DNA of 64,000 nt from Podarcis erhardii (Eukaryota): the NCBI GenBank assembly GCA_964252035.1, contig OZ176211.1. One strand, given 5' to 3'. The translations under genes and the position numbers were made by a program. Below are positions 4,686 through 51,948 of this stretch, one piece after another. The notes beneath the pieces are model-generated. The model saw only the letters and a list, made by a program, of their open reading frames with translations, searched no databases and was not told where the DNA came from. Positions within the stretch are counted from its first letter, which is position 1. Each line of letters begins with the position of its first letter.

Positions 4686-4877
4686 GCTTTGGTTTAACTT
4701 TTTGCTTTTTCACAGTAGTTCTCCTGGGATATCTGAGGAGGAAAGGGTTTTTGTGCGCATACAACTTGCTGAAAGGAGGTCGCAGGACCCTAGGATAATT
4801 TCTTGATCATCTTTGATAATGTTTTTGTACGATCCTTTCTGATAAATGGTTGGCATCTACTTGGGGTTATTCCTGTT

Positions 4878-19681: not shown

Positions 19682-20040
19682 GTAAAAGGTAAAGGGACCC
19701 CTGACAGTTAAGTCCAGTCGCAAACAACTCTGGGGTTGTGGTGCTCATCTTGCTTTACAGGCTGAGGGAGCCGGCGTTTGTCCGCTTCTGCAGACAGTTT
19801 TTCTGGGTCATGTGGCCAGCATGACTAAGCTGCTTCTGGCAAAGCCAGAGCAGCGCACGGAAACACTGTTTACCTTCCTGCTGGAGCGGTACCTATTTAT
19901 CTACTTGCACTGCATGCTTTCGAACTGCTAGGTTGGCAGGAGCTGGGACCGAACAACGGAGCTCACCCCATCACAGGGCCTCGAACCGCTGACCTTCTGA
20001 TAGGCAAGTCCAAGCGGCACAGTGGTTTAAACCACAGCGC
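19682..20040 (-). mobile_element. Sauria SINE
   Basis: tRNA-like head (rc of gcgctgtggtttaaaccac...ggttcga), core ctagcagttcgaaagca, (ACCTTT) tail. Confidence 0.92.
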
Positions 20041-21052: not shown

Positions 21053-24000
21053 TTTTTTTTTTTTTAATATATTTTATTGAGGGTTTTCTTGTTTTACAGT
21101 GTAAGTGTAATGCCTCGTGTATTTTTTCCCCCCCCGTGTAACATTTTTACAAATCCATTTCATTTGTTGAGGCATTAGGGGGAGAAGAAAAAAGAAAAGA
21201 AAAAAAAAAGAAGAAAGGAGGGTGGAAGGAGGGGAGATGGATGGGGGTGGGGTGGGGTAGCGGTGTTTCTATTATGCTTAATGTATGTAGTTTGGTGTCA
21301 GCGTGCTTGTGTTGTTCACTTGTGTTCCTTTGGTGGTGAGAGAGGTTGGGGTTGGCCTAGGATGTGATTGTTTGTTTGTGATTGGCTGTGGTGATCTTTG
21401 TTTTCGTGTGTGAGTGAGGTGGGTGGGTGTTTTGGATCAAGTTAGCCATATTGATTTTTATGCTGTTGGTGGATTATTGTCATTGTCCTGTTGGGCTGTG
21501 TATGTGATAAAGGGGAGCCATACCGGGGTGAAGGTGTCTTCTTCTGTTTGTCCCCGTGTCAGTTTCAGTTTGTTAGTTAATTTTTCTAGTAGGGCTGTTT
21601 CCCATACTATTTGGTACCATTGGTCCATGCTTACTCCTGACAGGTCTCTCCAGTGTCTGGTTATGGTGTTTCTGGCTGCTGAAAGTAGGTGGGTTATGAG
21701 TTCTTTGTGGAGTAAATGGGCATTGTTGTCTTGGAAGATGTTTAGTAGGGCCAATTCTGGGGTGAAGTCTAATACTTGCTTTGTTATTTTACATATTTCT
21801 TGTATGGCTGTTGTCCAGAATAGTTGGATTTTGGGACACTCCCACCACATGTGGAGGTATGTGCCTGTGGAGGTGCACCCTCTCCAGCATTTTGGTGAGG
21901 TTCCTGGGTGTATTAGCGCTAGTTTCCTTGATGTTAGGTACCACCTGTAGGTGAGTTTCAGTGTGAGTTCTTTTCTTTTCGTCGATATGGATTTAAAGGG
22001 GGGTTTAGACCACATTCTGGTCCATTGAGTGGGGTTAATCTCATAGCCTATGTCATTCTCCCATTGTTTTTTGATTGCGTCTAGGGGATTTGCGGGATTT
22101 TGGAGTAGTATTTTGTATATTGCGGATACCGTCCCTTTACCATTTCCCTTTGTTGTTAGGAGGAGGTTTTCAAAGGTTGTCAGGGGCCTAGTTGCTGCTG
22201 ATTTTACTGTTGGGTTGTTTAAGAGGGCATGTAGTTGGTGTTGTGTTAACCAGGGCATTTGGGTGTCTTCTAGTTTGTCTTGTATTTCTTGTGTTGACAA
22301 GGGTTTGTTATTTTTATAAAAGTCTATTAGGCGATATAAGCCTTTGGTTCGCCAGGCTTTTATCTGGAGGTTTTGTGCTGCATGGTGGAATAATGGGTGG
22401 TACGCCAGGGGGATTAGTGGGGATGGGGTTGGGGATAGTTTGCCTATTTGTGTTTTCCATGCTTTGAGCATGGTCTGTGTGTACCTGTTAAGTGTTGTGG
22501 GAATTTTCTTTAGTTTGTTTGGGAGGAGTGGGTATGTTGTGGTGCAGGTATTTTCAATTGTGTCCCTCTCTAGGTGTACCCATTGTTTTGTCTCATCTTC
22601 TAGTATGTATGGAATTACATGACGTATTTGGTTGGCAATGTAATATGCTTCTATGTTGGGGATTCCCCATCCTCCTTCTGAGGTGGGGAGGTGCAGGTAT
22701 TTGGGGCTTATTCTTGGTTTTTTATGTGAGAAGATGAAAGAGTGTAGTTTTCTCTGCCAACTGCGGAGTTGGGTTGAGGGGATCCAGATTGGGAGGGTTT
22801 GGAATAGGTAGGTTAGTTTTGGGAGTGTGATCATTTTGATCATGGCTATTTTGTCTGAGAGAGTGAAATTCGTGTTATTCCATCTCTTTAGGTCTTTGTT
22901 AATTTGCCGCCACAGGGGCTTGTAGTTGTGGAGGTACAATTTGTTGAGGTTTCTGGTTATTTGTACCCCTAGGTATCTGAACTTGGTGTGGCAGAGTTTT
23001 ATTTTGGTGACCTTCGTGAGCTCTTTTTGGGTGTGAGGAGGGGTGTTGAAGCACATAGCTTCTGACTTTGTAAAATTTACCTGTAGGCCCGACACCATTG
23101 CAAATTTGTTGAGTTCTCTGATTAGGGAGGTTGCTGTGCTTATGGGGGTCTGGTGTTGTCACCATTAGGTCATCTGCAAAGAGCCCTAATTTATAGGTTC
23201 TGCCTTTTATTTCCACTCCCTTGATGTCTGTGGCTGCTCGGATGCGGATTGCTAAGGGTTCCAGAGCCAGGATAAATAAGAAGGGAGACAGTGGGCATCC
23301 TTGTTTCGTGCCTCTTTGGATAGCTATAGTATTAGAATCCATATTGTTAATTCTGCATTTTGCTGAGGCTTGGGAGTATATTTGTTTGAGGATTTGTAGG
23401 AAGTTGGGGCCAAATTTCATGTTAGTTAGTACTGCTAATATGTATTTCCACTCTAAGCAATCAAAGGCTTTGAGGATGTCTAGGGACATAATTGTCAATG
23501 GGAGTTTCGTTGCCTTGCTGTGTTCGATCAGGTTCAGTAGTTTCCTGATGGGGTCTGTTATATTGCGGCCAGGGACAAAGCCAGTCTGGTCTGGGGCTAT
23601 TAACTTGTGTAGGAAGATTTTTAGGCGGTTGGCCAAGATTGATGTGAATATCTTGTAGTCTTGGTTTATTAATGAGATTGGGCGGTATGATTCTACTTTG
23701 AGGCTGTCTTTTAGTGGTTTTGGGATGGAGACTATTTTGGAGTGGGTCCAGGTTTTGGGGATGGGGCCCCCTTTTATGATGTCGTTGAATAGGCGGGTCA
23801 TGTAGGGCATCAAGGGTTCTTTGAATTTCCTATAGAATTCTGCTGTGAAGCCGTCTGGGCCTGGGGCTTTGTGTGGTTTCAGGTTTTTGAGGACCACATC
23901 TATTTCCTCTGGGGTGATAGGGCTGTCCATGAATTCCTGTTCCTCATCAGTTAGGGTAGGCATGGTCAGTCCTGCTAGAAATGTTCTGATTTCCTTCTCT

Positions 24001-24205
24001 GGTGGGTTATGGGAGGTGTATAGGTTGGAGTAGAATTCTGCAAATTCTGAGGTTATTTCTTCAGGGGAGGATGTTATGCTGCCGTTTTTTTTGGTGATGC
24101 AGTGTATTCTTGTTTTGAGTGCTTTTTTCCTACATCTATTTGCTAGTAATCTGGAGTTTTTCCCTCCATATTCATAGAAACGTTGTTTAGAATATAGAAT
24201 GCTGA
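21053..24205 (-). mobile_element. Young 5'-truncated L1-clade LINE (ORF2 RT to C-terminus, 3'UTR, poly-A)
   Basis: RT motifs PGPDGFTAEFY, YRPISLINQDYKI, DQTGFVPGR, QGCPLSP, LFADD; C-terminal CWRGC...HMWWEC zinc knuckle. AATAAA (tttatt at 21073-21078) and poly-A (T-run 21053-21065). No clear TSD. Confidence 0.95.
21458..24205 (-). CDS. L1 ORF2 (partial, about 915 aa) split into two ORFs by one +1 frameshift in the G5 run at 23144-23148
   Basis: ORFs 22899-24209 and 21458-23098 join as ...FADDLMVTTPDP/ISTATSLIRELNKFAMVSGLQVNFTKSE... if one G is removed. No internal stops in the joined frame. Confidence 0.85.
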
Positions 24206-26442
24206 TCACCTCAACTGCAAGTTGCCTCCTCCCATCACCTCCTTTTTACAATGGTGCATTTGCAGCTTTAGTTTTTTTGTCATAAAGAAAGAAACAAAAT
24301 CATAAAGATGGGGTTTGAAGCATAAAGGGGAATTATTTACATAAAGGAGACATTTTACATCTGCTGGGTGATACGGTATTCCTTTAAAGTGAACGTGATG
24401 AAAGGCTCCTGAGCACGTTTGTCACATCTGAAGTCAGAGCATTTTATCGCACATTGAATATATTAGATTTAATCTCACGGAGACTTTGAATCTTGTGTCG
24501 GGTCATGGGCCCCTTATTTGCAAGGCCAGCTCTGATGCTTTGTTTATGAGCCCAAATGTGAACGTAGAGCTGAAGGGAGGTTTGATCTCAAATCAGAGAT
24601 CAGAGCATTTGGTGTGATAGGTAGCAAGTAGTGCAGAAAAATTCTTGATGGCTGCAAATTTGTTTTAGGGGCCCCCACCCCTGAAATCAGAACAAATTAA
24701 AACTTGACATTATTGGGGCTTGCCTACACTACGGACTTAAAAGGGGTAGCTGCCAATTCCCAGGAAAAACAAGGGTGTGTGTGTTTAGGTCACAACGTGT
24801 GTGCCAGGCATGCCCTGCTCCAGACATACAATTCACCATGGTAGGTATACACTGTTACATTTGTAGAGCCCCTCACACCTGCTAAACACCTGGACAGTGG
24901 GGTGTGGCAGGCTGGCCCACAGGGCTTCGCAACCCCCTGTGGGATTTACAATTTGGGGCACTGTAAATATTAAGCGGGATATCGTATTTTGGCAGCCAAG
25001 TAAAAGGTTTGCAAGAAACCAGCCAGAGAATAGATAAAATACTCACCCAGGAAAAGACTACTGGATAGGGTAAGCTGAGCAACCAGTGAAAACTTCATCA
25101 AGAATAAGCAGTTAACAAGCACAGAATAACTTTTTCATAGGTGTTGATGAAGCAGATGTTTATGTACACATGGTGAACAATGACTACTCATGTGCAGGAT
25201 CTGATTTAACATTCCAATATGGGGAACAAATTCAGAGATGGGGGATGTTGATCAATTTGTAATGCAGCTAAGCATTTCAAGCAGGACATACTCGTATACA
25301 GAACAAAGTAATTATAAACGTGCACGTTACAAAGGAAGTTAGGCTGGCAAGCACATGAGCCAGGGCTTTTTGGGTGGTGGCCCCACAATCTTGGAATACT
25401 GTCTCATGTTATATTAGGGAGTCCTCATCCATGGATATTTTTATACAAGCCTTAAAAACCATGTTACATTGGCTTACATAAACTAATAGTTGCTGTGGCT
25501 CTGATTGTGTGGTCTGGTCTTGATGGCTGTATTGCTAGTTTTAATAATATGGGTTTGTTTTGTTAAGATGCTTAAATGTTGTTTATTGTTTTCTTGTACT
25601 ATAATGTGAACCACCTTGGGAAGAATTTTTGTTCTAGAATTTTATTCAAGATTGTGCAGGAATTTATTAGATCAAAAAAATTCAGGACGGCCACCAGAAA
25701 TAAAGGGGAGACACCCCACCCCCAAAACCCCATAAACAGTCCAATGAGGACTATGTATGCTTAGTGTGTGAATAATGCTAATGGACTGTTGCAAGGAATG
25801 GGAAAATGGGAGGGACATTGAGGGTCTTAAGCAGACATTCTCCACACTGCAACATTTTGTTGCAGGTCTCAGTAATCTTTTCCATAATTCTGCTGATTTC
25901 TGTTTGTAAGGGCCCTGAATGATGTAGGCTTGAGATGCTGGTTGCAAGGCTCACACAACTGAATGCTCTTGCATATATTTTTCAATAGTTTTTATTAAAG
26001 ATTTTCAAAAAACAATCCCTAGAGCTAGATGTGAAGGAGAATGTTCCAGCTCAGCCATAATACCTAGTTTGTAATGCCCAGTGACTTTTTGTTTTCATCT
26101 GTTTTCCTTTGATCTAGGACACTGTTGGCATCTTCCTCCTTCAGACATAATGAACGATGCAGTGTTGGGGACCTGTCAGCTCCACTGTACTCTTTTGTTT
26201 TCTATTCATCATTATGTCTTAGCTGTCCTCTTTAATTTAGCCAGAGTTCAGTGTGGGGCACAGGATGGAAATCACTCATTGCTGAAGACAATACCTTGGC
26301 TCTGCATGGAGATTTCACACATCCATTTATCATCACGTGTATATTTATACACAGTAGATGCAGCTGTTAGGATTAGAAAGAACATTTAAGGTAATCATTC
26401 CTATAGCTCATTCAGCGATTAATAGCTTATCTATGGCATAGA

Positions 26443-28625: not shown

Positions 28626-29428
28626 ATCCCAGTTACAGGTTTGCAGCCTTAGAAAAGCCATGCTTATGTTTCTTTACTAGCATTTGATCAATTTTGGTGT
28701 AGCCTTGCAAGCCCTTTCTTCCCTTCCAATCTGCTTTGTTTTCTTTCTTCATCCCGTTCTATATTACTTTCAAAAGTAACTTCACTTTTAATATTTTACC
28801 CAAAAGGATCCACGTCTGCTCAACTGAATGACTTCACTTATATTTATAAGCTATAAAGCCAGAGTAGGATTTGACCCAAAGGATCTTACTCAATTTATTT
28901 CATGGAGTTTTAAGTAAGGTTCATGACCATTAAGTGGTCTGGTTTTTTCAGCTCTTGGCAGAAGAAAGACTGACATTTCCAACCCAAATGTCTTATGGTT
29001 CTTATTTGTGCACAAGCCTGTTCTTGCCTCTCAGAAATCAATAAATTATCCAACTCCTATTTAAATACAATAAAAACTAGCACAACAACTTATACATTAT
29101 TACATAGTGCAATTGACAGTAGTTGCTTAAATGCAAGAGGCAGTCATGCATTGGGAATAGTAAATACATGCAAATAAATGGCAGTGGGCTCTTAGATATA
29201 GATACTGTATTCCTAATAGTGATTAATATAGAATGGTATGCTGGGTTGTTCACATGAATTGAAAAATTAGTCTGTCTTTTGCAGGCAAAAGCCAAGCAAC
29301 ACTGCAGGTTAGTGCATGTTAATAGCTGGCTGTATTTTGATGGTCACCACAAGGCATCTGTGGCAGGAATAAACAGGGAAAAATAAGCCTGCTATAACTA
29401 TACCCCGTCTCTCCTCAAAGTGAAGCTA

Positions 29429-29659
29429 CAGTGGTACCTCGGGTTACATACGCTTCAGGTTACATACGCTTCAGGTTACAGTCTCCGCTAACCCAGAAAT
29501 AGTACCTCGGGTTAAGAACTTTGCTTCAGGATGAGAACAGAAATCATGCTCTGGCAGTAGGAGGCCCCTTTAGCTTAAGTGGTGCTTCAGGTTAAGAACA
29601 GTTTCAGGTTAAGAACGGACCTCCGGAACGGATTAAGTACTTAACCTGAGGTATCACTG
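29429..29659. mobile_element. Tc1/mariner-type MITE (TIR CAGTGGTACCTCGGGTTA)
   Basis: TIRs, TA TSD, internal repeated cgcttcaggtta motif. Confidence 0.88.
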
Positions 29660-30294
29660 TACTTAGTTAGTAAATTCACGTCTAAGGCTTTAGAATGTTT
29701 ATTCACAGGGTTGTATATATTAGTACAATCCTCATTTTTGCACATTTAAAGCAAGAATGGGGAACCTCAAATTTCTGGCCCCCAGGACTGTCCTCAAGCC
29801 ACACCCCTTCTTCCCTGGCCACACCCCTCCACTATAGGTTTGCCATATGTCTGGAAAATTCCGGACCTGTATGGAAATCAGATGCCTAAAATAGTGTCCA
29901 GGATTGTTTTCCCCCAGGGTTCCCCCATCTTTCTGCGGCGTGCATGGCGAGAGCTCCAGCCACCCATGGCGCTGCTGCTGTTTGCGCTGGCTGCTGCCTC
30001 CCTCACTTGACTGTGCATGGCCACTCCATCCAGGAACTGCTTCTCCAAGTCTCAGTTGTCCCAGCACAGTGTCCTGAGCGTGGTGGGCTCTTGCCACAGC
30101 CTCAGTGCCAGCACTTGGCACACCTTTCCGAGGGGCCTAGACCCACTGTTTACATCTTCAAGCCTGCCCGTCTGACGACAAGGTGTGAGCATTCCTGCGC
30201 AACAACTCCCACCGTCTCCTACAGGCAGGGGCGCCGACTTATAAAAAATATTGGGGGGGCCCATACCGGGGTCCTGCCCCGGGAAGTTTTCTAA

Positions 30295-30825
30295 GAGCCG
30301 CTCCAGGCCCGTTGCTGCTGCTGCCACCCGCCTCGTGGCCCCCTCGCCAGCTGAGGGAGGGAGAGAGACCGAGAAGGAGAGAGATGCGTGGTGGGCAAGG
30401 CAAGTGCCCGCCGCGCCGCGCCTCGCCTCCCACCGCCCCTCGTGCCGGCCGCCCCCTCCCCTCCCTTCCCCGCGCGCGCGCGCTCGCTCGCTCGCTCGCT
30501 CACCCTCCTCACCCCCGCTCTTGGCCGTTCGCCCCAGGAACTCGCCGCTGTTGGGGTTGTAGATGAACCTCCGCCCCTCGGCCATAGACTGGCTGAAGGG
30601 CTTCTTCTCCTCCTTGGCCATAGCGAGAGAGAGAGAGATAGAGAGAGAGAGGCTGGAAAGAGAGAGGGAGCTCGGCGGTTTTTCCCCTGCCGAAACAACA
30701 GCGGCTCCTCAGAACCGCTAAGTAACTCTCCCTCAGGCGCCCGGCGGGAGAGCAGAAGAGAGGAAAAGGAAAGAGGGGCTGGGCCAGTCGCACGCACCGA
30801 GCAAAACTACTCGCGCCGCCTCTTT
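30295..30825 (-). promoter_or_regulatory. Short CpG-island-like block: captured ATP1B3 5' region/5'UTR, exon 1 and start of intron 1
   Basis: Abrupt GC/CpG-rich block with (CG)n, (CTCG)n and (GA)n tracts around the exon. It is bounded by transposon terminal sequence on the left and AT-rich transposon interior (30830-30965) on the right. Confidence 0.55.
30513..30621 (-). pseudogene. ATP1B3: Orphan copy of coding exon 1 of Na+/K+-ATPase subunit beta-3 (36 codons + 1 nt), inside the hAT element
   Basis: Translates [36 protein letters not shown]. This matches the beta-3 N-terminus as I recall it (bird ...[31 protein letters not shown]) better than beta-1 or beta-2. The 109-nt coding exon ends in a phase-1 donor G|GTGAGG (GT at 30512-30511). 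Both conserved Trp codons read GGG. Exons 2-7 were not found by eye in the window. Confidence 0.85.
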
Positions 30826-31138
30826 TACTACCGTAATAATTATTTGTTTTAACTCATTACTGAATGTATTTTAAAAGGTAACTATCGTCAAACAAGGAAA
30901 ATAAAAAATACCAACATAATTTTGTGATTTTACAAAGCATAATATAACTAATAATTTTCTTAAATTATTGGGGGGGGCAGAGCCCCCCCAAAACGAATTT
31001 TGGAGGGGGCTTGGGCCCCCTCAGGCCCCATGGAGTCGGCGCCTATGCCTACAGGTAAAAGGGAGGCAACATGGGCTTGTGTGCAAGCGTGTGTGTGTTA
31101 TTCCGGAAATCAGAAGCGAAAGCATCGCTTTCACTCTC

Positions 31139-31624
31139 TTTTTTAAAGAAATAATATTTATTCAACTTTTAAAGATTACAAAGAGAAAAAGAAAAAAGAA
31201 AAAAAGACAGAAAAAATACAAGCAATTAAAAAAACACCACCACAGATCAAACCTTTACATAACTTTCTTTCCTTTGCTTATTTCCTTGACCTCCTCACAC
31301 CTCCCTTTTTTTGTATTCTAGTTCAATTAGATATTTCAGCAAATCCTTTCCAGCTTTGTTTTTATCCTATTAATTTATCTTAATATACTGTAATTTTACA
31401 TTCTCGTCTTTCACCAATTAACAAATCCATTTTTACCTAATCCTTTATATCATTTCTGCTAAAACCACATTACTTCATTCCAACATCCTTCTAACATTCC
31501 TTAATTTTACAATGTTTCTGTAGATAAACTTTAAATTTTTTCCAATCTTCTTCCACCGACTCTTCACCTTGGTCTTGGATTCTGCTAGTCATTTCCGCCA
31601 GTTCCATATAGTCCATCACTTTCA
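31139..31624 (-). mobile_element. L1 3' fragment (end of ORF2 plus 3'UTR)
   Basis: Minus strand reads KVMDYMELAEMTSRIQDQGEESVEEDWKKFKVYLQKHCKIKEC*, then a U-rich 3'UTR with AATAAA and an A-rich tail. Possible TSD ACTCTC (31133-31138 / 31625-31630). Confidence 0.7.
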
Positions 31625-32037
31625 ACTCTCCATGACCTCTGTGATCCAGGGAGGTTGGGTGGCCTCTAGCCCTAGCGGAATCGGCTCCCCCTACCCCCCC
31701 CCTTGGCTGGAGGTGACGCTATGGTTGCAGGAGGCTAGGCAGGCTCCTTGTAGGCAGCGGTGGGAAGGGAGAGCAGGTTTGAAGGGGAGCCATAGAAAGC
31801 AGGGCATCAGTGGCCAGAGGTGCACTAGTTATGGTAGCTAGCTGCGTTATTACACATAAGGGTTAACTTTCCCCTTTAAAAAAATCAACAATTTTGGGGA
31901 TTGTCTGCATTTTTACTTTTTGAAATATGGTAAGACTACTCCACCGGTTCTTATTTGTATCCTTCTTGAGTGTTTTACCTGGGTAAAACTTGGACCTTGC
32001 TCATGCGTTTAAACTGCCTCGATGGAGGGCAGAGAGG

Positions 32038-32070
<33 letters not shown>

Positions 32071-32255
32071 ACCATCTAGTCTGCTGTACAAAGGAAAATT
32101 TTATATTCATTGGTCTGCCCCACAGGCCACCCCCAGAAGGTACCCTAGAAGGAAATGGTGGCCCTCAGGCTGAAAAATGCCTCCCACCCCTGCTTTTAAA
32201 GCCAGCTTGATGTGGACAGACCACATCAGTGGTGGAATAAATCTCTTAGATGACA

Positions 32256-32387
32256 TAATAATAATAATTTATTTATTGTTTATACCCCACCCATCCAGCT
32301 GGGCCTCCCATCCACTCTGGATGGCTCCCAACAGATTAAAAACAGAATAAAACATCAAACATTAAAAACTTCCTTAAACAGGGCTGC
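32256..32387 (-). mobile_element. L2 3' tail remnant
   Basis: (AAT)n plus taccccacccatcc...taaaaacttccttaaacagggctgc; same family as 52356-52635. Confidence 0.65.
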
Positions 32388-35334
32388 TTGTGAAGAAATA
32401 TATATATGGGGGGGTGAGCCCTGCCCCTTCTTTCTGTACATGAATAGGAATTCCTGCACAGGGACTATGCATATACACCCCAGTACACATAGGATCTGAG
32501 TGAGGGTGGATCTGATGGATTGATCAGTCTACTTCCAGTCTGTGTCAGCTTCACATGTTCATAAGCCTGTTACGTCCTGGTTTTGCATTCATTTGCATTT
32601 GTTTAAAAAAATCTGAATGAAAATTCATATTGAAATTCATATTGAAATACATCTATGAGGTGGTGGGAACGATGGCAGAGGTTTCCTCCTCTGCGAAAAG
32701 GACTCAAATGGACCACTTACGTCTGTGGACTTCCCTTTCTGCTAATGGAGAGGAAGGTCTACAATGTCTAACTGCTCCTCAGCAGACCTCCTCAGGAACT
32801 TTGGGTTGCTCTCTTAATATTTAAAAGCCCTTCTTTGAAACTATTTACCTTCAGGATAACTCGCTTTATGCAGAAGATCAATGGAACATAAGTAAATATT
32901 ATTTTATTTAAGTGAAAATGATGTCTTCCCTTAAGGAAATATTGAACCATTTTCACATTCACAACCAGTTTTAAAATGAAATTGAGAGCAGGAAGAGAGA
33001 AGGGAGATATCCAAATAGGAGTATTCTTTGTCACCATGTGTATAAATAGCTGTAAAGTGATAGCATAAGTGAATGTCTCGCCTCTTCCGCAGGCAAATGG
33101 AGCTAATAAAAGTGGCAATCCTAGGAGACTTCCATCTACAAATCAAATTTGGTCCTCCTGCTTTCATAAACTCCTGGCATTTAATCAGTGGCGGAGTGCT
33201 GTTTATTGGTTTGGCTTGTAGTGCAGATGCCTTCAAGACCATCTCTTAAATAAGCTCTGAAGGAATTATAGTGGAGTGCATTGGAATAGCTTGCAAATGC
33301 CTTGAGTTGGAAGACAGGGAGAGAAGTTATTATGAGAAATAAAAGGTATCAAGTGCCTAAAGATTGTTAACTTTTTTTTTTCAAGAGTTGGCTCTTCAGC
33401 CTGAAGTGGCAGGCTCTGCAGTAAAGCTCTTTGATAGATGCTGGTGGAGGCTTTCTGGATCTGGTTGCAATAACAAACGATAACGGCTAGGATTCAAAGA
33501 CCTGCATAGGCTTACACAGATTCCAGTGAAATGTTTGACACACAAAAACACCACCACCCTGCTTTATTTAGCTGCCTCCCAACTGTTTTTTCAAATTTCC
33601 CTTGGTTTCAGAAGCAGGTTTTCCCCCAATAAAAATAAGTCTTAAAACCCCTGTGGCTTCATGAAACTAATGTAATTCTTCTTTGGATCCATGTGTTTTG
33701 GTGATAAGGATCTGAACACAACAGTCACCTATAAGCTTTGTTATATATTTCTTGGGTGCCTCCTGGAACTGCTCAGAGATCATTATGAATTGGTTGGGTG
33801 CATGCCAACTACCAAAATTACCGGGTGGGTGGGGAGGAGTGGTGATACTAATTCTCTGTAAGAAACATCAGACAGATGGTTATGAAAACCGTGCAGGGAT
33901 GGGGGATATGTGGTCTTGCAGATGTGGGCTGGCATTTTTATACCAGCATTGCCAGAAAATGTGCATGCATGAGGAGCACCCATCTCACAATAAACACCCT
34001 TGATGAATGGCTCCCAATCTGTATAATAAAGAGACCCAGTAGCAGAAATACTCAGTTGTCTGCTTCATTTTAATTCACATACCTTATTTTTTTAAAAATC
34101 ACAGTTGGCAACTTGGTCAGCCAAGTACGACACAGGGACTCTGCAACCTATTTTGACAATTTCTGATTATGTTTCTTTTTAGCTGCTTGTAAGGCCAAAG
34201 AGGCCACATAGACCAGGATAGCTCCTTAACAAACAAACACAAAAGCAAACAACAAACAAACTTATTCATATACTGTTCTTCTTCATCATCCCCTAGACAG
34301 AATCATGAATAAACTGCAGGACAACCTGGAGCAGATGATACCATGAAGAGAAGTTTACAAGTCCTCTATTGCCAACTGCTTAGTAAGTAGACAATCATCT
34401 GAATACTTTGACATTTTCTCTCTATTGTAGGTGTACTTACTTTGGATATGAGTAATACTACTCTTGCCCCCCCCCCTTCTCCCCCCTCTTAATGTTCATC
34501 AAAATTTATTGTAAATTTCCTTCCATTGTTCATCTCACACAACCCACCTTATCCATTTCTTCCCCTTTCTTGTGCTAGGGGTTAAGTTGTTAAATTGTTT
34601 TCTTTTCTTTTCTAGTGGTGATAGCAAATGGATGGGCCCATGTGTCTTAGAGTTGGATCTCTGCCAATTTCTCTTACAGCACTTGTCTGAACTACTAGGG
34701 ACAACCTAGCCATGTTGCTAAATGCCTGGATGCTGCCAAATGCATGATTGCCTCTGATAACCGCTTAGAGGTTTTGATGATTAAGGGGTATATATAAAAT
34801 AAATAAAACTGTGGCTGCAAATCGTAATTCCCAGCTCCTCCATAGTGTTTAGAACGTAACTGTGTGCTGATGTTCTCTCCCCCCCCCCTCGTTCTCAGTG
34901 ATAAAGAGGAGAAGCAGTATAATGCCAGGCATAGCTGTCCGGTCCCAGCAGGGGTTGGGGTTGAGGCGGTGAGTGGTCTTTGGCACAGGCACTTACAAAC
35001 AAGGTGTCATCAGGAAAGGCGGAGTCACATCCAGATCCTGGACAGAGGAGTGTCTAAGATTCTGGCTAGAGCATTTCCTTCTGTGCTGTATAGAACTGTT
35101 GATTCAGCAGAATGGTGGCGCAGTCATTGGTTCCTGCAACATGGAAGTGATGGGGGCTTTATTAAGAGCAGTGTCTTGAGGAAGATGGCAGTACATACTA
35201 CATGCTCCAGCTTGGGTCTGAGAGCTGAGAATGCAGGTAAATTCTACCAGATGTTATGATGGGGGAGAACAGAGCCAGATGTGTATTTGTTACTTTTTGT
35301 AGCAGCTGTACATCAGGTCACATTTCTAATTTTA

Positions 35335-36399: not shown

Positions 36400-36540
36400 C
36401 ACCTTGCTCAGTATTACCTGACTAGCAGAGGCTTCTTCCTTGACTTCAAATAGGAGACATTCCTGGAGATGCCAGGAATTGAAACTGGGACAGTCTACTT
36501 CCAAAGCAGATGCTCTACCACTGAGCTTCAGCCTTTTCCC
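36400..36540 (-). mobile_element. Old tRNA-derived SINE
   Basis: Reverse complement has A-box agctcagtggtagagcatctgc and B-box-like gtttcaattcctggc. Confidence 0.6.
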
Positions 36541-44693: not shown

Positions 44694-45051
44694 AAGGTAA
44701 ATGTAAAGATACCCCTGACCATTAGGTCCAGTCGCAGACGACTCTGGGGTTGCGGCGCTCATCTTGCTTTATTGGCCGAGGGAGCCGGCGTACAGCTTCC
44801 GGGTCATGTGGCCAGCATGACTAAGCCGCTTCTGGCAAAGCAGAGCAGCACACAGAAACGCCGTTTACCTTCCCGCCAGAGCGGTACCTATTTATCTACT
44901 TGCACTTTGAGGTGCTTTCGAACTGCTAGGTGGGCAGGAGCAGGGACCGAGCAACGGGAGCTCACCCCGTTGTGGAGATTCGAACCGCCAACCTTCTGAT
45001 CGGCAAGTCCTAGGCTCTGTGGTTTAACCCACAGCGCCACCCACTTCCCCC
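44694..45051 (-). mobile_element. Sauria SINE with 12-bp TSD
   Basis: Full-length consensus-like copy. TSD TATAAACTATTA at 44682-44693 and 45052-45063. Confidence 0.95.
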
Positions 45052-46260
45052 TATAAACTATTACCAACACCTTTAATCGAGCCCAGTAGCACACAGGTAG
45101 CCAGCACCAAGCTTTTATTGGGTATAAGCAACGGTTCATAGGAAGTGCCTCTTTTCTATAGACAAAATGTGATGTACGCAGAGGAATGAGAGCTACTTTC
45201 TATGTAATGGCTTGATGGCAGTGAAAGTGCTCTTATAAGCCTCTCCATTATCAGGAAGCATAATAGGAGGCAGATTTCAATGCATAACTAACCAGAGATT
45301 GTGGCAAGCTTCTGTCGTCCTACAGTACCCATATATGTTGTCACTGCAAAATGTAGCCAACCTGCATTTCTTTACCCCCTTCAGCTCATATTCACCACTC
45401 CTTCCCACCAAAAACCTCAATTAGTATGGTGATTCAGTCAATCCACACGGAATAAGTAAATCTGCACAGGTTGCATTGATGTGCGCAATTTGCTATTCCT
45501 CTAGAGTTCTAACTTTTCCATGGTACCTAGCTGGAAGTTTCTCCATACAGTTTTGAACACATCTGGCCTTAAGCATGCACTGCAATTACAGGCAAAACTT
45601 TGTAGCAATCTGCTGTGACAGTTCTTAATAGATAGCTCAATAGACTTGAATCTCACTGCCACTTTCAGCCTGGAGGTCTCCCATGCTGCTAACAAGTGTT
45701 CAACTGCATTTCTCAGCCTGGAAGAATATAGGACTAAACAGCATGATACCGGGAGTCCTTTGGAGCTATGAATCATTGCAGAAGTGCTTGAGAGAAGTTG
45801 GAAATTCGCACACTCCCAAAAGTCTTCATGTCACATCTTATTTCTACTTTCAGAAAGAGTTCATAGAATATTAGAAGCTGCCGGTCTCCAATAAATTGCA
45901 TGCAACTCAGATGATTTATAGAAAAGTTATGTCTCCCTTTTAAATCCTGGGGCTTTTCATTCCTCTATTAGCCAATTTGTGAGGCTCTCCTCACTCTTCC
46001 AAGTTTTGATTCGTTTTCTGTCTGGGCAGGGGCGGAGGGCAATATTATGTAGTGAGTGCAGTTGCACAGTGATAAAACTCAAGAGTTCCCCATTGCTGAA
46101 GGCATCAAGAATTCATGAACCATTATTAAGATATTGAATAATAAGAGGAAGTTGAAGAATAGCAAAATAGTCCATTTAGCGTAACCTAAAATTTTCCTTA
46201 GGTGTGGAAGTAACAATTTTTAGCTTGCAATGATCAATAAATGGCTTCTATTCCCCCCTT

Positions 46261-46622
46261 GGGACGCGGGTGGCGCTGTGGGTAAAACCTCAGCGCCTAG
46301 GACTTGCTGATCACATGGTTGGTGGTTCGAATCCTCGTGGCGGGGTGAGCTCCCGTCGTTCGGTCCCAGCTCCTGCCCACCTAGCAGTTCGAAAGCATCC
46401 TTAAGTGCAAGTAGATAAATAGGTACCGCTTTATAGCGGGAAGGTAAACGGCGTTTCCGTGTGCTGCTCTGGTGCCGGTTCACCAGAGCAGCTTCGTCAC
46501 GCTGGCCACGTGACCCGGAAGTGTCTGCGTACAGTGCTGGCTCCCGGCCTCTTAAGTGAGATGAGCGCACAACCCTAGAGTCTGTCAAGACTGGCCCGTA
46601 CGGGCAGGGGTACCTTTACCTT
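46261..46622 (+). mobile_element. Sauria SINE
   Basis: gggacgcgggtggcgctgtgg head, ctagcagttcgaaagca core, tacctttacctt tail. Confidence 0.93.
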
Positions 46623-47640
46623 TTATTCCTCCCCTCAGAACTACCTTGTCTCTCTTGTCTTTATGAAATGGGTCATTTTGGCATTAGTCAATCCATCCAT
46701 TTGTTGTTGGCACCATTTGTGTCCTCCACTTCCTACCATATAATAATCTTGCTGCCATTAACATACATGAGATCTGTTCCTTATACAATTCTTTACTGAA
46801 TGCAGTTGTTTTTTCAATGGAGAGGAGAGCTAAGTCAGGAATAAGTGTTTGGCTGATAACCTATCCAATGATATAAAAAAATTAAGCCCTAAAGCTCTCT
46901 ACTCTTTCACATGCCCACCACAGGCAAATATGACCCCTGAGGTCCTCAGCCTCTCCAGCAAAATAGGGATAGTGAGTTATGAATATAGCTGAGCTTTACT
47001 GGTGTTAAGTGCCAGTGATAAATCAGTTTCAGCATACCTTTATGTCACTTTCGAATTGGAACAAGACCATAGATGTTACCACTAAGTATCAATGATTGTA
47101 ATATTGCAATCCGTCTCCCAAGCTTTAAGTGCAGAGTAACCAGTTTCAAATTTAAGATCCAAGAGGATCTTAGTAAGAATGGAGATGAGACCCTTTCGCT
47201 CCTTAGAACATGGTTTGCAAAAGAATTCATAAAAAGTCAAAGAAAGAGGGGACAGGGACCCTCAAATCTGCAAGCTGGTTGAGCAAAGGTTATTTGAGCT
47301 ATTTGAAACCAAGAAACTCATGTTCCAGAGAGAAATTATTTTTTGCAGATGAGAATTCAGAGATTCTGAATTGTCAGTAGGTTCACTACCATATTTACAG
47401 GGTGTATAGCCTTGACAACAAGTGATCTTTATCATTCATCAATATTTTGTCAAAATCCATTGGTCTCTTAGCTGCTGATGGATTCTCAGATAATTATTTG
47501 CTGAAGATTTTACTTTAAAATATTCACACCATTGGGAATTTTCCTGATGTAAACATTATTTAATGTTTTAATTCTCCATCAGCAGTCCATGGTTGGTTAA
47601 GTCCATATATCTAAACAACGTATTACCTCCAAATCTCAAA

Positions 47641-49578
47641 GTAAGTAAGTAATTTTATTTACGGCCATAGGCCCATACAGGTAAAAACGACACATAAATA
47701 ACAACTTGTGCACGTGGGAAAAACAGCCGCGAAAACACCACTATAACAATAAAATACTATAAGATAGAATGGCATACTACGCCTTACTTAGCTTGTAGTG
47801 CTCCTTGGCGTCGCTTTTGGGTAAGGACAGCGACCAGGAACCTTGCCACTTTCAGGGTCGTATGAGTATCCTTATCCTGCAAGATTTGGGCAAGGTGGAA
47901 TTTTGGTGGGGTACCCTCTAGTTTCTGTATGATTGATCCCAACAAATTTGCCCGTGGCACATTGAACAGGGGGCAAGTGAACATAATGTGCTGGAGCGAC
48001 TCCGGTGTCTCCTTATCACATTCGCACATGGCGGGGGCTTGGCCCTTTGAGAATCTATGTCTCAGGACGTTGGAGGGGAAAACGTTGAACCTCGCTTTGG
48101 TGAAGGCCAGTCTATGGGCAACAGTCAAAAGGGAGGAGAGGTATGATGGAACGCAGTAAGTTAAAGTGATACCAATGTTCTGAGGCGAACAAACACCTCC
48201 CCCCAGCATATAATTTCGCTGTAGATCGATGTCATCCAGTCTTTGGCGGATCAGTCTTAGAGCGGTAATTTGGTCTAGTTTTAGGGAATCTGAAGGAGAG
48301 ATTCCATAACTCAGGAGTTTGGCATGAATTCTACTAGTCCAAAGGCTAGAGAATTCATCTCGCCATAAGCATTGGACAAGGTAGTGGTTTGGTAATCTAT
48401 GCCACAATGATAACCAATAATTGAAGACTTGCTTCCACAGGCAAGTTTCTAAGGATGCGATCTTCAATTCTAGTCGCATGGCTGCGTTGCTTACGCACAG
48501 GGGGAGCATTAGGAGCCGACGTAGGAATTGATTTTGCAGTGTCTCGAGAGGAGCAAGATCTGTCATCACAGCCCAAAGCGGGGCAGCATAAGCAACCACG
48601 GCAACCACTTTTGCCTTGAACACCTTTAGGGCCGAGGGAACATGCAAAGCTCCATCCGAAAAAAAGAATCGGAGGAGCGCATATGACAGAGTTTTGGCCT
48701 TGTTAAGTAGGTGTTGAATTTGAGCTTTCCACCCCAAATTGTATTGAAAAATAACTCCTAGGTATTGAAATTTTAGAACTTGCTCTATTTTTGCTCCACC
48801 AAGCTTCCATTCGTATAATCTCCGGCTTCTGGAGAAAATCAGAATCTTGGATTTAACATGGTTGATGGTTAATTGGTTGAGTTGACAATACGTGGCAAAG
48901 ATCTTCAAAGCTCTGGTTAGTCCAACACGTGTATAAGATAGAATTACCGCGTCGTCCGCATATAAAAGGAGTGGGCAGCGGTAGTCCGCTAGTCTAGGCG
49001 CGTGTGTACTTAGAGATGAGTTAACTAGGGGTGCTCGCATGTCGCTGATGAATAGGTTGAATAGACAGGGAGCCAATATACATCCTTGGCGCACTCCCTT
49101 GTTTATTGGTATCGAATTTGTGAGGTCGCCCACAGGAGTAAGTCTCACTCTGGCAAGGGTACCTTCGTGGAGCTGACTTATAAGCCTTAAGAGTCTTCTA
49201 TCAATGCCCTGTTTCGCAAGTTTCTCCCATAGGATGTTTCTAGGAACGCTGTCAAAGGCTGCCTTTAGGTCTAAGAAGGCAGCACAGAGGTAGCCCCGGG
49301 GAGGAGAGGAGTACTTCCGTGCAAGGTGATAAAGAACTATCGCATGATCGGTTGTAGAGCGTTTAGTTCTGAACCCTGCTTGTTCGTGGCCAATCTGATT
49401 AGTCTCATCTACCCATCGCAATAGTTTAGTCAGCAAAAAGCTGGCATAAATTTTCCCTATGATCGAAAGGAGGCTGATGTTACGGTAGTTTTCCGGCTCC
49501 GTTGGAGAGCCTTTTTTATGAATTGGTACTATAATGGCCTCCTTCCATATTTTGGGGATGAGGCCAGAAGCGTTGATT
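47641..49578 (-). mobile_element. Young 5'-truncated RTE-X-like non-LTR retrotransposon
   Basis: Perfect 14-bp TSD CTCCAAATCTCAAA (47627-47640 and 49579-49592), (TTAC)3 tail and AATAAA. RT motifs QAGFR, DLKAAFD, KGVRQGCILAP, YADD; C-terminal CEC...HIMFTC knuckle. The RTE-X clade call is an inference. Confidence 0.9.
47784..49577 (-). CDS. Reverse transcriptase ORF (partial, stop-free, about 597 codons) of the RTE-X-like LINE
   Basis: The listed 550-aa ORF continues upstream in frame (INASGLIPKIWKEAIIVPIHKKGSPTEPENYRNISLLSIIGKIYASF) up to the TSD. Confidence 0.88.
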   Translation of the reverse strand: MNASGLIPKIWKEAIIVPIHKKGSPTEPENYRNISLLSIIGKIYASFLLTKLLRWVDETNQIGHEQAGFRTKRSTTDHAIVLYHLARKYSSPPRGYLCAAFLDLKAAFDSVPRNILWEKLAKQGIDRRLLRLISQLHEGTLARVRLTPVGDLTNSIPINKGVRQGCILAPCLFNLFISDMRAPLVNSSLSTHAPRLADYRCPLLLYADDAVILSYTRVGLTRALKIFATYCQLNQLTINHVKSKILIFSRSRRLYEWKLGGAKIEQVLKFQYLGVIFQYNLGWKAQIQHLLNKAKTLSYALLRFFFSDGALHVPSALKVFKAKVVAVVAYAAPLWAVMTDLAPLETLQNQFLRRLLMLPLCVSNAAMRLELKIASLETCLWKQVFNYWLSLWHRLPNHYLVQCLWRDEFSSLWTSRIHAKLLSYGISPSDSLKLDQITALRLIRQRLDDIDLQRNYMLGGGVCSPQNIGITLTYCVPSYLSSLLTVAHRLAFTKARFNVFPSNVLRHRFSKGQAPAMCECDKETPESLQHIMFTCPLFNVPRANLLGSIIQKLEGTPPKFHLAQILQDKDTHTTLKVARFLVAVLTQKRRQGALQAK

Positions 49579-50275
49579 CTCCAAATCTCAAACCTTCCAA
49601 CTTTTCTCTATATCATTTCATATTGATGGTGAGCCATTTGGGCTGGTTGGACTTTTATGTTGTTTCCAGTTTCTCAGCAGTTCAGAATCAAGGAATTTTG
49701 TTTTGTTTGCTTCCTTGAAAATTCCTCTCTTCCCGTAGTATTTTATGTAGTACGACCTTCACCAAATTCCTCTCAAATTTAGATACCTTTGAATGTCAGT
49801 TATCCATTCTGAAGAAAGCCATTTGATACAGGTAGCAGTATAGTATAATTTTATGTTTGGAATAATTTGACACCCACTTCACCCTGCTGCCTTTTTCATC
49901 TTATAATATTCTGATGTTAATATTTTCCCCTTGCTGTTTTTAATTTTTCTCGTGGATTCATCCTGCTTTATGCTTTGTTTTATGCTGTTTTCTTTCATTT
50001 GTCTTTTTTTTTTTTTTTGCAAAATGGTTTTGTGTTGCAGTAATTTCATTTTAATCTCCATTTGTAAATCTCTTGGAAAGCGGAATATCAGCTCTCTAAA
50101 TACAATATGATCCAATAAATAGCTTTTCCTGAACACATTTTGAAAAACATGGCTGTAGACCTCTTGTGCGAATGTGGGGAGGAGTGGTGCATAGATAATT
50201 TGCTGAAATAACTGAATGATTATCAGAGCGTTTGGACTTCTCAAAGAACTTTAGACATTAAAAGTTATAGCATGA

Positions 50276-51237: not shown

Positions 51238-51948
51238 TAGGGATGGGGCAGAAATTCCAGCCAAGTGATGTGTACAGAAATGCATATACTGAGGTATAAT
51301 GGGCATAGAAAATGCATTAGGGAATGTGCCTTTGGAAAAAAAAAAGTGGGATGTGAGTGGCGCTGTGGGTTAAACCACAGAGCCTAGGACTTGCTGATCA
51401 GAAGGTCGGTGGTTCGAATCTCCACAACGGGGTGAGCTCCCGTTGCTTGATCCCTGCTCCTGCCCACCTAGCAGTTCGAAAGCACGTCAAAGTGCAAGTA
51501 GATAAATAGGTACCGCTCTGGCGGGAAGGTAAACGGCGTTTCTGTGTGCTGCTCTGGTTTGCCAGAAGCGGCTTAGTCATGCTGGCCACATGACCCCGAA
51601 GCTGTACGCCAGCTCCCTCGGCCAATAAAGCGAGATGAGCGCCGCGATCCCAGAGTCGGCCACGATAAATAGGTGCCCTCAGCCAATAAAGCGAGATGAG
51701 CGCTGCAACCCCAGAGTTGGTCACGACTGGACCTAATGGTCAGGGGTCCCTTTACCTTTATGTTAGGCAAACTTACAGATAAAAATGTGAGTACATTAGG
51801 AGAAATGCACACTAACACGCTGATGAATTTTTATGGGATTAAAAAAACAACAACTGCACCCAAGGAACTGACCTGTGGAGAACTGAATTTAAGATTGGAA
51901 AAATTAGAAACAGAGAAAAATCAGAATTGCCAGATTCACCCATTCCTA
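51238..51948 (+). mobile_element. hAT-type MITE (TIR TAGGGATGGG), interrupted by a Sauria SINE
   Basis: TAGGGATGGGG at the left end, CCCATTCCTA at the right end. 8-bp TSD GTCTACAT / GTCTAAAT (7/8). Confidence 0.7.
51348..51760 (+). mobile_element. Sauria SINE with an internal duplication of about 49 bp, nested in a hAT MITE
   Basis: Consensus head, core and tail. Segment gccaataaagcgagatgagcg...cccagagtyggycacga occurs twice (about 51617-51665 and 51677-51726). Confidence 0.92.

What the first reader, a model, noticed from the sequence alone, without database searches (positions are those of the whole stretch)
30218..31055. hAT transposon that has captured ATP1B3 exon 1 with its GC-rich 5' region (Pack-hAT-like transduplication in a lizard)
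Seen in sequence: matching 14-bp TIRs and a perfect 8-bp TSD (CCTACAGG) enclose about 530 bp of CpG-rich DNA containing a recognisable Na+/K+-ATPase beta-3 first coding exon with its phase-1 GT donor and about 220 bp of intron 1. I found no ATP1B3 exons 2-7 and no exons of its usual neighbours (GRK7, TFDP2) in the window. Established: gene-fragment capture by non-autonomous DNA transposons is well known in plants (Pack-MULE, Pack-CACTA) and for Helitrons. Inference: capture by cut-and-paste TIR elements is far less documented in amniotes. Keeping the intron shows DNA-level capture, not retroposition. If the element was mobilised after capture, it would spread a housekeeping promoter plus exon 1 plus donor cassette.
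Basis: partly seen in the sequence, partly recalled or inferred. Interest (0 to 1): 0.88.

Follow-up and report, generated by a model that had tools for sequence, protein, structure and literature searches.

The report
Lizard hAT transposon carrying ATP1B3 start
An 822-base cut-and-paste transposon in a wall-lizard-type genome carries a 533-base genomic copy of the start of the sodium-pump gene ATP1B3, and contig depth suggests tens of copies in this lizard; the mechanism is known but is rarely seen at this copy number in vertebrates.

Summary
A perfect 8-bp target-site duplication (CCTACAGG, 30218-30225 and 31048-31055) and 12/14-matching 14-bp terminal inverted repeats bracket an 822-bp element. 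Its middle 533 bp (30293-30825, minus strand) matches the native ATP1B3 5' end of five lacertid genomes with identical boundaries in all five. The cargo holds about 200 bp upstream of the ATG, coding exon 1 (37 codons), the GT donor and 220 bp of intron 1.

The window is not the native locus. It has no exons 2-7 and shares no synteny with the native loci.

Public contigs of the likely source organism cross both outer junctions at single-copy depth. A contig across the cargo/right-arm junction sits at roughly 35-55 times that depth, so the element probably moved after the capture. Two related organisms also hold the cargo at high depth, one at hundreds-fold.

This copy is decayed: both invariant Trp codons now read Gly, and it has private indels. 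The capture left out the CCAAT, GC-box and CRE-like motifs just upstream, so "housekeeping promoter" overstates the cargo.

I file it as a new member of a known kind (Pack-TIR/Pack-hAT; Tan et al. 2021). The scan has noted another ATP1B3 copy on other DNA of this genome (s1-232447) and sister families carrying CENPW, SPR and GNAL.

The parts
30218..30225 (.). Left copy of the 8-bp target-site duplication, CCTACAGG
   Evidence: Identical to 31048-31055.
30226..30239 (+). Left terminal inverted repeat, CAGGGGCGCCGACT; it begins with the hAT-type CAGGG
   Evidence: The single-copy contig of X1 (record 2) runs from the flank only 24 nt into the element and then stops, so repeated DNA begins here.
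30226..30292 (+). Left transposon arm, 67 bp, GC 0.58
   Evidence: No match in 205 kb of the native ATP1B3 loci of five lacertids. Summed contig depth is thousands of times single-copy in three organisms.
30293..30512 (-). Captured ATP1B3 intron-1 fragment, 220 bp, beginning with the GT donor at 30512-30511
   Evidence: Colinear with native intron 1 in L001-L005. A spliced RNA-type contig (X15 record 13) stops matching at 30512.
30513..30621 (-). Captured ATP1B3 coding exon 1 (36 codons plus the first base of codon 37; ATG at 30621-30619), with W16G and W36G
   Evidence: At 30576 most read depth in all four runs carries A, which restores Trp16.
30622..30825 (-). Captured 5' UTR plus about 58 bp upstream; it lacks 14 nt that the native genes and the other copies have after 30672
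   Evidence: The distal 145 bp are 100% identical to the P. lilfordi, P. muralis and P. raffonei native loci. The X15 mRNA-type contig ends at 30767. The native CCAAT, GC-box and CRE-like motifs lie just outside the cargo.
30826..31047 (+). Right transposon arm, 222 bp, GC 0.37, with a G/C-run palindrome at 30969-31023
   Evidence: No match in the native loci. High-copy in the contigs. X1 record 3, at depth 3482, runs from the cargo 29 nt into this arm with no mismatch.
31034..31047 (-). Right terminal inverted repeat; the reverse complement reads CATAGGCGCCGACT
   Evidence: It matches the left TIR at 12/14. X1 single-copy record 4 starts 25 nt inside the element.
31048..31055 (.). Right copy of the target-site duplication, CCTACAGG

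Best explanation
This is a non-autonomous cut-and-paste transposon of hAT type: short TIRs, an 8-bp TSD and no transposase gene. Its interior was replaced by a 533-bp genomic copy of the 5' end of ATP1B3, which makes it a Pack-hAT.

Inferred origin. A double-strand gap in a hAT deletion derivative was repaired with a template switch into the GC-rich ATP1B3 CpG island and back. This is the abortive gap repair or FoSTeS-type route of Tan et al. 2021. It happened in a Podarcis-like ancestor.

Inferred spread. A hAT transposase supplied in trans then moved the hybrid to new sites, each with its own 8-bp TSD. That produced tens of copies in this organism and possibly hundreds in a relative.

The copy in this window is one such insertion. 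It is now decaying and has no sign of function. It offers an ATG, 37 codons and a splice donor, but at most a core promoter.
For: Shown:
- The TSD plus TIR configuration is unique in the window and rare in shuffles.
- The cargo boundaries are identical (30293 and 30825) against the native loci of P. lilfordi, P. muralis, P. raffonei, Lacerta agilis and Zootoca vivipara. The arms are absent from those 205 kb.
- The intron is retained, so capture was at the DNA level.
- Native exon 2 lies 14.8-17.4 kb downstream of exon 1 in all five species, yet the window has 30 kb on that side without it and shares no synteny.
- The cargo groups with the Podarcis natives (83/94 support; 2.6-3.3% versus 5.6-6.2% to Lacerta and Zootoca) and has a longer branch.
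- In the likely source run X1, single-copy contigs (depth 64-98) cross each outer junction by 24-25 nt and then end.
- Also in X1, a contig at depth 3482 spans the cargo/right-arm junction and carries the native-like 14 nt that this copy lacks.
- The cargo is also at high depth in organism B (about 260 versus 12) and organism C (about 60,000 versus 95).

Lead, not tested here: another ATP1B3 Pack-hAT is noted on a different piece of this genome (s1-232447).

Inferred: the capture mechanism and mobilisation in trans.
Against: - No second copy was read base by base here, so distinct TSDs of sister copies are not shown.
- The copy-number figures are ratios of contig k-mer depths. The tool warns these are not copy numbers, and they may be inflated about two-fold by overlapping contigs.
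- The hAT assignment rests only on TSD length and the TIR start. The right TIR reads CATAG, not the YARNG pattern.
- No autonomous partner or cargo-free parent element was found.
- The TSD does not fit the weak nTnnnnAn hAT target consensus (recalled from my own knowledge).
- No orthologous empty site was demonstrated.
Confidence: 0.85

Rival explanations
1. In-situ capture. A hAT MITE already sat at this site, and the ATP1B3 fragment was copied into it here by transposition-independent gap filling. This locus would then be the founder, or a single-copy Pack-TIR, rather than a transposed daughter.
For: Tan et al. 2021 find that most animal Pack-TIRs are single-copy and arise this way.
Against: The contig across the cargo/arm junction has 35-55 times single-copy depth in X1 and carries native-like sequence that this copy lacks. 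Another copy is noted elsewhere in the genome. This copy has many private changes that the majority of reads lack (30576, the 14-nt and 5-nt indels). If tens of copies exist, the prior that this one is the founder is small.
Confidence: 0.05
2. This is the native ATP1B3 exon 1, or an assembly chimera that places it here, and the TIR/TSD-like strings are chance.
For: The exon-1 peptide is 35/37 identical to the lacertid protein.
Against: The window has no exon 2 within 30 kb, whereas all five lacertids have it at 15-17 kb. There is no synteny with the native loci. Homology stops exactly at 30293 and 30825 in all five species. Both invariant Trp residues are lost. Independent contigs cross both outer junctions at single-copy depth. 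The TSD plus TIR configuration is improbable by chance.
Confidence: 0.02
3. The carrier belongs to another 8-bp-TSD superfamily (P, Merlin or Zisupton) rather than hAT. The rest of the story stays the same.
For: The superfamily call rests on TSD length and the first five TIR bases only. No transposase was linked to the element.
Against: CAGGG at the terminus and TIRs of about 14 bp are typical of hAT (from my own knowledge of the Wicker classification). hAT is the dominant DNA-transposon superfamily behind animal Pack-TIRs, 208 of 370.
Confidence: 0.07
4. This copy, or the family, has been exapted. It would act as an alternative first exon or promoter that splices from the 30513 donor into host exons, or as a source of antisense RNA against ATP1B3.
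For: The cargo keeps an ATG, an open 37-codon exon and a GT donor, and its CpG content is barely eroded (o/e 0.83 versus 0.88 native). Tan et al. report that many Pack-TIRs are transcribed as chimeras.
Against: Both invariant Trp codons are mutated in this copy, and the proximal promoter motifs were not captured. No lacertid chimeric protein carrying the exon-1 peptide was found among proteins of 104-490 aa or in the HMMER representative search. The only RNA-type contig laid on the region is the spliced native mRNA. No host gene was identified around the insertion.
Confidence: 0.05

Closest known systems
Pack-TIRs / Pack-hAT of animals (Tan et al. 2021, Nat Commun 12:4280, PMC8277862), e.g. 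Pack-hAT-N8_XT carrying 291 bp of the CAPSL 5' UTR in Xenopus tropicalis
   Same: A non-autonomous hAT with TIRs and an 8-bp TSD carries a few hundred bp of a host gene's GC-rich 5' end. The parental gene is elsewhere in the genome. There are multiple copies and no TE at the parental locus. Multicopy cases capture GC-rich DNA.
   Different: That survey found only 4 multicopy cases among 370. The frog example was found on three chromosomes, and another frog case has five copies. Its main text does not mention lizards. Here contig depth suggests tens of copies, and hundreds in a relative, and the cargo spans the 5' UTR, a coding exon, the donor and intron sequence.
Pack-MULEs of rice and other plants
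   Same: TIR elements carry host gene fragments, favour GC-rich 5' ends and amplify to many copies.
   Different: The superfamily differs: Mutator has 9-11 bp TSDs and long TIRs. Those are plant hosts, and Pack-MULEs often carry pieces of several genes.
Sister Pack-hAT families noted by this scan in the same genome (CENPW, SPR, GNAL-XL; s1-263131, s1-220619, s1-263141 and others)
   Same: They are reported as small hAT elements with captured gene starts, in roughly 10-30 copies.
   Different: The cargos differ.
hAT-mediated amplification of a housekeeping gene in fungi (PMC6710886)
   Same: A hAT transposon carries and multiplies host housekeeping-gene sequence.
   Different: I saw only the title and abstract. 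That case is in fungal genomes and concerns amplification of a gene, whereas this element carries a short 5' fragment.

Membership tests
Pack-TIR (gene-fragment-carrying TIR transposon) | Both ends are those of a repeated TIR transposon family | tested here: met
   TIRs match 12/14. The arms 30226-30292 and 30826-31047 are at thousands-fold summed contig depth in three organisms. Single-copy contigs end 24-25 nt inside each terminus.
Pack-TIR (gene-fragment-carrying TIR transposon) | A target-site duplication flanks the whole unit | tested here: met
   Perfect 8-bp CCTACAGG on both sides. It is the only such configuration in the window, and 4 of 100 shuffles give any.
Pack-TIR (gene-fragment-carrying TIR transposon) | The internal sequence derives from a non-TE parental locus located elsewhere | tested here: met
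   The 533-bp interior matches native ATP1B3 5' ends in five lacertid assemblies with identical boundaries. The window lacks exons 2-7 and shares no synteny. The native locus of the source genome itself was not fetched.
Pack-TIR (gene-fragment-carrying TIR transposon) | Multicopy class: sister copies with the same internal junctions and different TSDs | tested here: inconclusive
   The junction-spanning contig is at 35-55 times single-copy depth, and a second copy is noted by the scan. No sister copy or its TSD was read here.
hAT superfamily | 8-bp TSD | tested here: met
hAT superfamily | Short TIRs beginning YARNG | tested here: inconclusive
   The left end reads CAGGG and fits. The right end reads CATAG and misses at position 3.
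hAT superfamily | Mobilised by a hAT transposase (BED, DDE and hAT dimerisation domains) from an autonomous element with matching termini | not testable with these tools
   There is no transposase ORF in the element, and no lizard-wide DNA search or TE library was available.
Native ATP1B3 gene | Exon 1 is followed by exons 2-7 in a conserved gene structure | tested here: not met
   tblastn finds only exon 1 in the window. Exon 2 lies 14.8-17.4 kb downstream in five lacertids.

The most novel reading that the evidence does not exclude
One hAT lineage of lacertid lizards repeatedly captures CpG-island gene starts (ATP1B3 here; CENPW, SPR and GNAL in other notes of this scan). It amplifies them to tens of copies, and in at least one relative to several hundred. 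That would be a vertebrate counterpart of plant Pack-MULE-scale transduplication. It would seed the genome with ATG-plus-splice-donor cassettes that could found chimeric first exons.
Probability: 0.3. Interest if true: 0.7.

Novelty: new member of a known kind. Interest (0 to 1): 0.5.

Why it matters
Gene-fragment capture by cut-and-paste transposons is a major source of new gene structures in plants. A survey of 100 animal genomes found it rare and almost always single-copy (4 multicopy cases of 370).

A lizard family that carries an ATG, a coding exon and a splice donor in tens to hundreds of copies would be useful in two ways. It would give a tractable vertebrate system for asking how multicopy Pack elements arise, by template switching during repair versus replication-coupled models. 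It would also allow a test of whether dispersed first-exon cassettes get recruited by host genes.

There is a practical point as well. These copies can mislead gene annotation, because they look like spurious ATP1B3 first exons and spurious CpG islands.

Tried and rejected
1. A search for sister copies through predicted proteins, using the ORF that spans exon, intron and left arm, returned only native ATP1B3 fragments of snakes, birds and turtles. The protein collection does not seem to hold ORFs from lacertid shotgun contigs.
2. An HMMER search of 1.84 billion representatives with the exon-1 peptide and a word search over proteins of 154-490 aa found no lacertid chimeric protein.
3. blastn of the element against the rest of the window and against 205 kb of native loci found no further copy of the arms, so no cargo-free parent could be described.
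4. The host gene of the insertion was not identified. Stop-free segments of 45 aa or more across the window look like TE ORFs or noise. The orthologous site in the five public lacertid assemblies therefore could not be fetched.
5. An empty site in organism B is possible. X4 contig 19 (696 nt) matches 29638-30217 and has 116 unplaced letters, and 580+116 would reach the next repeat's edge. However, no joint, second piece or variants were listed for 31056-31163, so I treat it as unproven.
6. A literature search for the TIR string found nothing.
7. The bacterial promoter and terminator scan and ARAGORN have no bearing on this element.
8. A composite of two complete MITEs was rejected, because no internal TIR abuts the cargo.
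9. Retroposition was rejected, because the intron is retained and there is no poly(A).
10. The window has no N. Read laying was given 3822 letters.

Full report
**What is in the sequence**

The stretch 30218-31055 reads: CCTACAGG, an 822-bp element, then CCTACAGG again. The element starts with CAGGGGCGCCGACT (30226-30239). It ends with the reverse complement of CATAGGCGCCGACT (31034-31047). The terminal inverted repeats therefore match at 12 of 14 positions, not perfectly.

I scanned the whole window for an 8-bp perfect direct repeat that directly abuts a TIR pair matching at 12/14 or better, 100-5000 bp apart. This site is the only hit. Only 4 of 100 Markov shuffles of the window give any hit at all. 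The window contains no N and no other copy of the element.

**The cargo**

On the minus strand an ATG at 30621 opens a peptide of 36 codons, followed by G|GT. The peptide is 35/37 identical to ATP1B3 of Podarcis lilfordi, Tiliqua and Pogona, at E about 2e-17. The two differences are the two Trp residues, W16 and W36. Those residues are unchanged in the ten squamate and chicken ATP1B3 N-termini printed. Both are TGG>GGG changes.

I fetched the native ATP1B3 loci of five lacertids:
- P. lilfordi (L001)
- P. muralis (L002)
- P. raffonei (L003)
- Lacerta agilis (L004)
- Zootoca vivipara (L005)

In every one, homology to the element covers exactly window 30293-30825. The 67-bp left arm and the 222-bp right arm have no match anywhere in those 205 kb.

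The cargo breaks down as follows:
- 204 bp upstream of the ATG
- the 109-bp coding part of exon 1
- 220 bp of intron 1, beginning with the GT donor

Retention of intron sequence shows that the capture was from DNA and not from mRNA.

**Not the native locus**

In all five lacertids exon 2 lies 14.8-17.4 kb downstream of exon 1. The window has 30.2 kb on that side. tblastn with the full protein finds nothing there except exon 1. Megablast of the whole window against the native loci finds only the cargo and dispersed repeats, so there is no synteny.

**Relationship to the native gene**

Without indels, the cargo differs from the three Podarcis native sequences by 2.6-3.3% and from Lacerta and Zootoca by 5.6-6.2%. 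The Podarcis natives differ from each other by 1.6-2.5%. A maximum-likelihood tree groups the cargo with the Podarcis natives (support 83/94). Relationships inside that group are unresolved. The cargo branch is 0.019, against 0.006-0.011 for the natives.

The copy carries eight private substitutions and several private microsatellite-type indels. CpG content is barely eroded, with 49 versus 51 CpG and o/e 0.83 versus 0.88.

The donor was therefore a Podarcis-type ATP1B3 allele, and this copy has since evolved without the constraint seen on the gene.

**What was not captured**

In the native locus, an ATTGG (CCAAT-box), a GGGGCGGG (GC-box) and a TGACGTA (CRE-like) motif sit at L001:4764-4788. 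That is directly upstream of the capture boundary at 4797. The motif names come from my own knowledge of consensus sites.

A 740-nt RNA-type contig of a related organism (X15 record 13) matches the window only from 30512 to 30767, and the rest of that contig lies elsewhere. I read it as the spliced native mRNA. It confirms the donor position to within 1 nt and puts the mRNA 5' end near 30767. The cargo thus holds only about 58 bp upstream of the transcript start. At most a core promoter was captured, not the proximal promoter.

**Evidence from public runs (Logan contigs only)**

In X1, which is probably the source organism because its flanks show 0-1 differences:
- A 626-nt contig at depth 64 runs from the left flank 24 nt into the element and stops.
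- A 187-nt contig at depth 83 starts 25 nt inside the right end and runs into the right flank.
- This is what a k=31 graph gives when a unique flank meets a high-copy repeat exactly at the TIR ends. It supports both outer junctions independently of the assembly. Neither contig reaches the tool's own criterion of 31 letters on each side.
- A 213-nt contig at depth 3482 covers 30658-30854. It runs from the cargo 29 nt into the right arm without a mismatch. It also contains 14 nt after 30672 that the native genes have and this window copy lacks.
- That contig therefore represents other copies of the same hybrid element, at roughly 35-55 times single-copy depth.

At position 30576, most depth in all four runs carries A, which restores Trp16. 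The W16G change is thus private to a minority of copies.

In two other organisms whose unique flanks differ from the window by about 3%:
- Organism B (X4): cargo depth is about 185-550 against 12 for single-copy flank.
- Organism C (X5): cargo depth is about 60,000 against 95.

The tool warns that summed contig depth is not a copy number, and overlapping contigs may inflate it about two-fold. I use these figures only as orders of magnitude: tens of copies in A and B, and several hundred in C. The arms alone are at thousands-fold depth, so the carrier family is very abundant.

The 0.81 share of sampled words held by X1 fits the idea that this copy's private variants are dropped from the contigs.

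**Leads from the scan's own notes**

These are unchecked AI notes and I treat them as leads only.
- Another "Pack-hAT ATP1B3" is noted on a different piece of the same genome (s1-232447).
- Sister families carrying the starts of CENPW, SPR and GNAL-XL are also noted, each reported at roughly 10-30 copies.
- I could not read those sequences. The second ATP1B3 copy agrees with my depth evidence.

**Mechanism (inferred)**

No TIR abuts the cargo on the inside, so the element is not a composite of two complete elements. The arms are unequal, 67 and 222 bp, as in deletion derivatives whose interior was replaced by filler DNA.

The best-fitting route is repair of a double-strand gap in a hAT element with a template switch into the ATP1B3 CpG island and back. 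Mobilisation in trans would follow. [quoted passage not shown] 2021. They also note that multicopy Pack-TIRs lie far from the parent gene, lack a TE at the parental locus and capture GC-rich DNA. All three hold here.

The hAT assignment rests on the 8-bp TSD and the CAGGG terminus. The right terminus reads CATAG. No transposase partner could be sought with these tools.

**Function**

I found no evidence for function.
- No lacertid chimeric protein with the exon-1 peptide appears among proteins of 104-490 aa or among HMMER representatives.
- The only RNA-type contig on the cargo is the native mRNA.
- This copy has lost both invariant Trp codons.
- The host gene at the insertion site, if there is one, was not identified.

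**Comparison with what is known, and novelty**

Tan et al. 2021 (PMC8277862) scanned 100 animal genomes and found 370 Pack-TIRs, of which 208 are hAT. Only four are multicopy: three in Xenopus tropicalis and one in the American alligator. Their frog example carries 291 bp of a 5' UTR and is found on three chromosomes. Their main text does not mention lizards.

The present element is a clear member of that kind. What sets it apart is the apparent copy number and a cargo that includes a coding exon with its donor and intron sequence. I therefore class it as a new member of a known kind, of moderate interest. Interest rises if the family-level picture is confirmed on assemblies, namely repeated capture of gene starts by one hAT lineage and hundreds of copies in a relative.

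**Limits**

- No sister copy, empty site, parent element or autonomous partner was read directly.
- One contig of organism B stops matching exactly at 30217 and has 116 unplaced letters, which would fit an empty site arithmetically. The tool listed no joint there, so I leave it as unproven.

Noticed in passing
window 29427-29661: A 235-bp SINE-like repeat lies here. Its summed contig depth is about 10^5 times single-copy in three organisms, and there are many 'goes back 235' joints, which indicate tandem or adjacent copies. Copies also sit in introns or flanks of ATP1B3 in all five lacertid loci.
   Followed up: partly
window 21461-24245 (-) and 47787-49607 (-): Two LINE fragments with long reverse-transcriptase-like open frames (566 + 448 aa, and 607 aa). 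They were not classified.
   Followed up: no
window 19684-20040, 44699-45049, 46258-46624, 51348-51665: Four copies of a dispersed repeat of about 350 bp. The same repeat occurs several times inside the ATP1B3 introns of all five lacertids at 78-91% identity.
   Followed up: no
window 31158-31669 and 32182-32437: High-copy repeats lie immediately right of the insertion, at 10^3-10^4 times single-copy summed depth, with sharp loose-end boundaries at 32335 and 32387.
   Followed up: no
window 36464-36535 (-): Rfam reports a tRNA hit (42 bits, E=1.6e-5), but ARAGORN calls no tRNA in the window. It is probably a tRNA-derived SINE head or a pseudogene.
   Followed up: partly
L001:4764-4788 (P. lilfordi native ATP1B3 promoter): CCAAT-box, GC-box and CRE-like motifs are packed within 25 bp and end 9 bp upstream of the capture boundary. 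The 145 bp downstream of the boundary are 100% identical among the three Podarcis natives and the cargo.
   Followed up: partly
window 30390-30773, run X5 (coded organism C): Summed contig depth over the whole cargo is about 60,000 against about 95 for single-copy flanks. Fourteen different contigs cover 30576. This suggests several hundred copies of the ATP1B3 cargo in that relative.
   Followed up: partly
window 30217/30218, run X4 (coded organism B), contig record 19: The contig matches 29638-30217, stops exactly before the TSD and has 116 unplaced letters. Its 696-nt length equals the left flank plus the right flank up to about 31163, as an empty site would give. No joint was listed there.
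   Followed up: partly
proteins P0048, P0046, P0057: Representative proteins of unknown origin carry an ATP1B3 exon-1-like peptide (73-76% identity) at internal or C-terminal positions: 297-333 of 340, 117-153 of 230 and 138-170 of 179. They could be misannotations or captures in other taxa.
   Followed up: no
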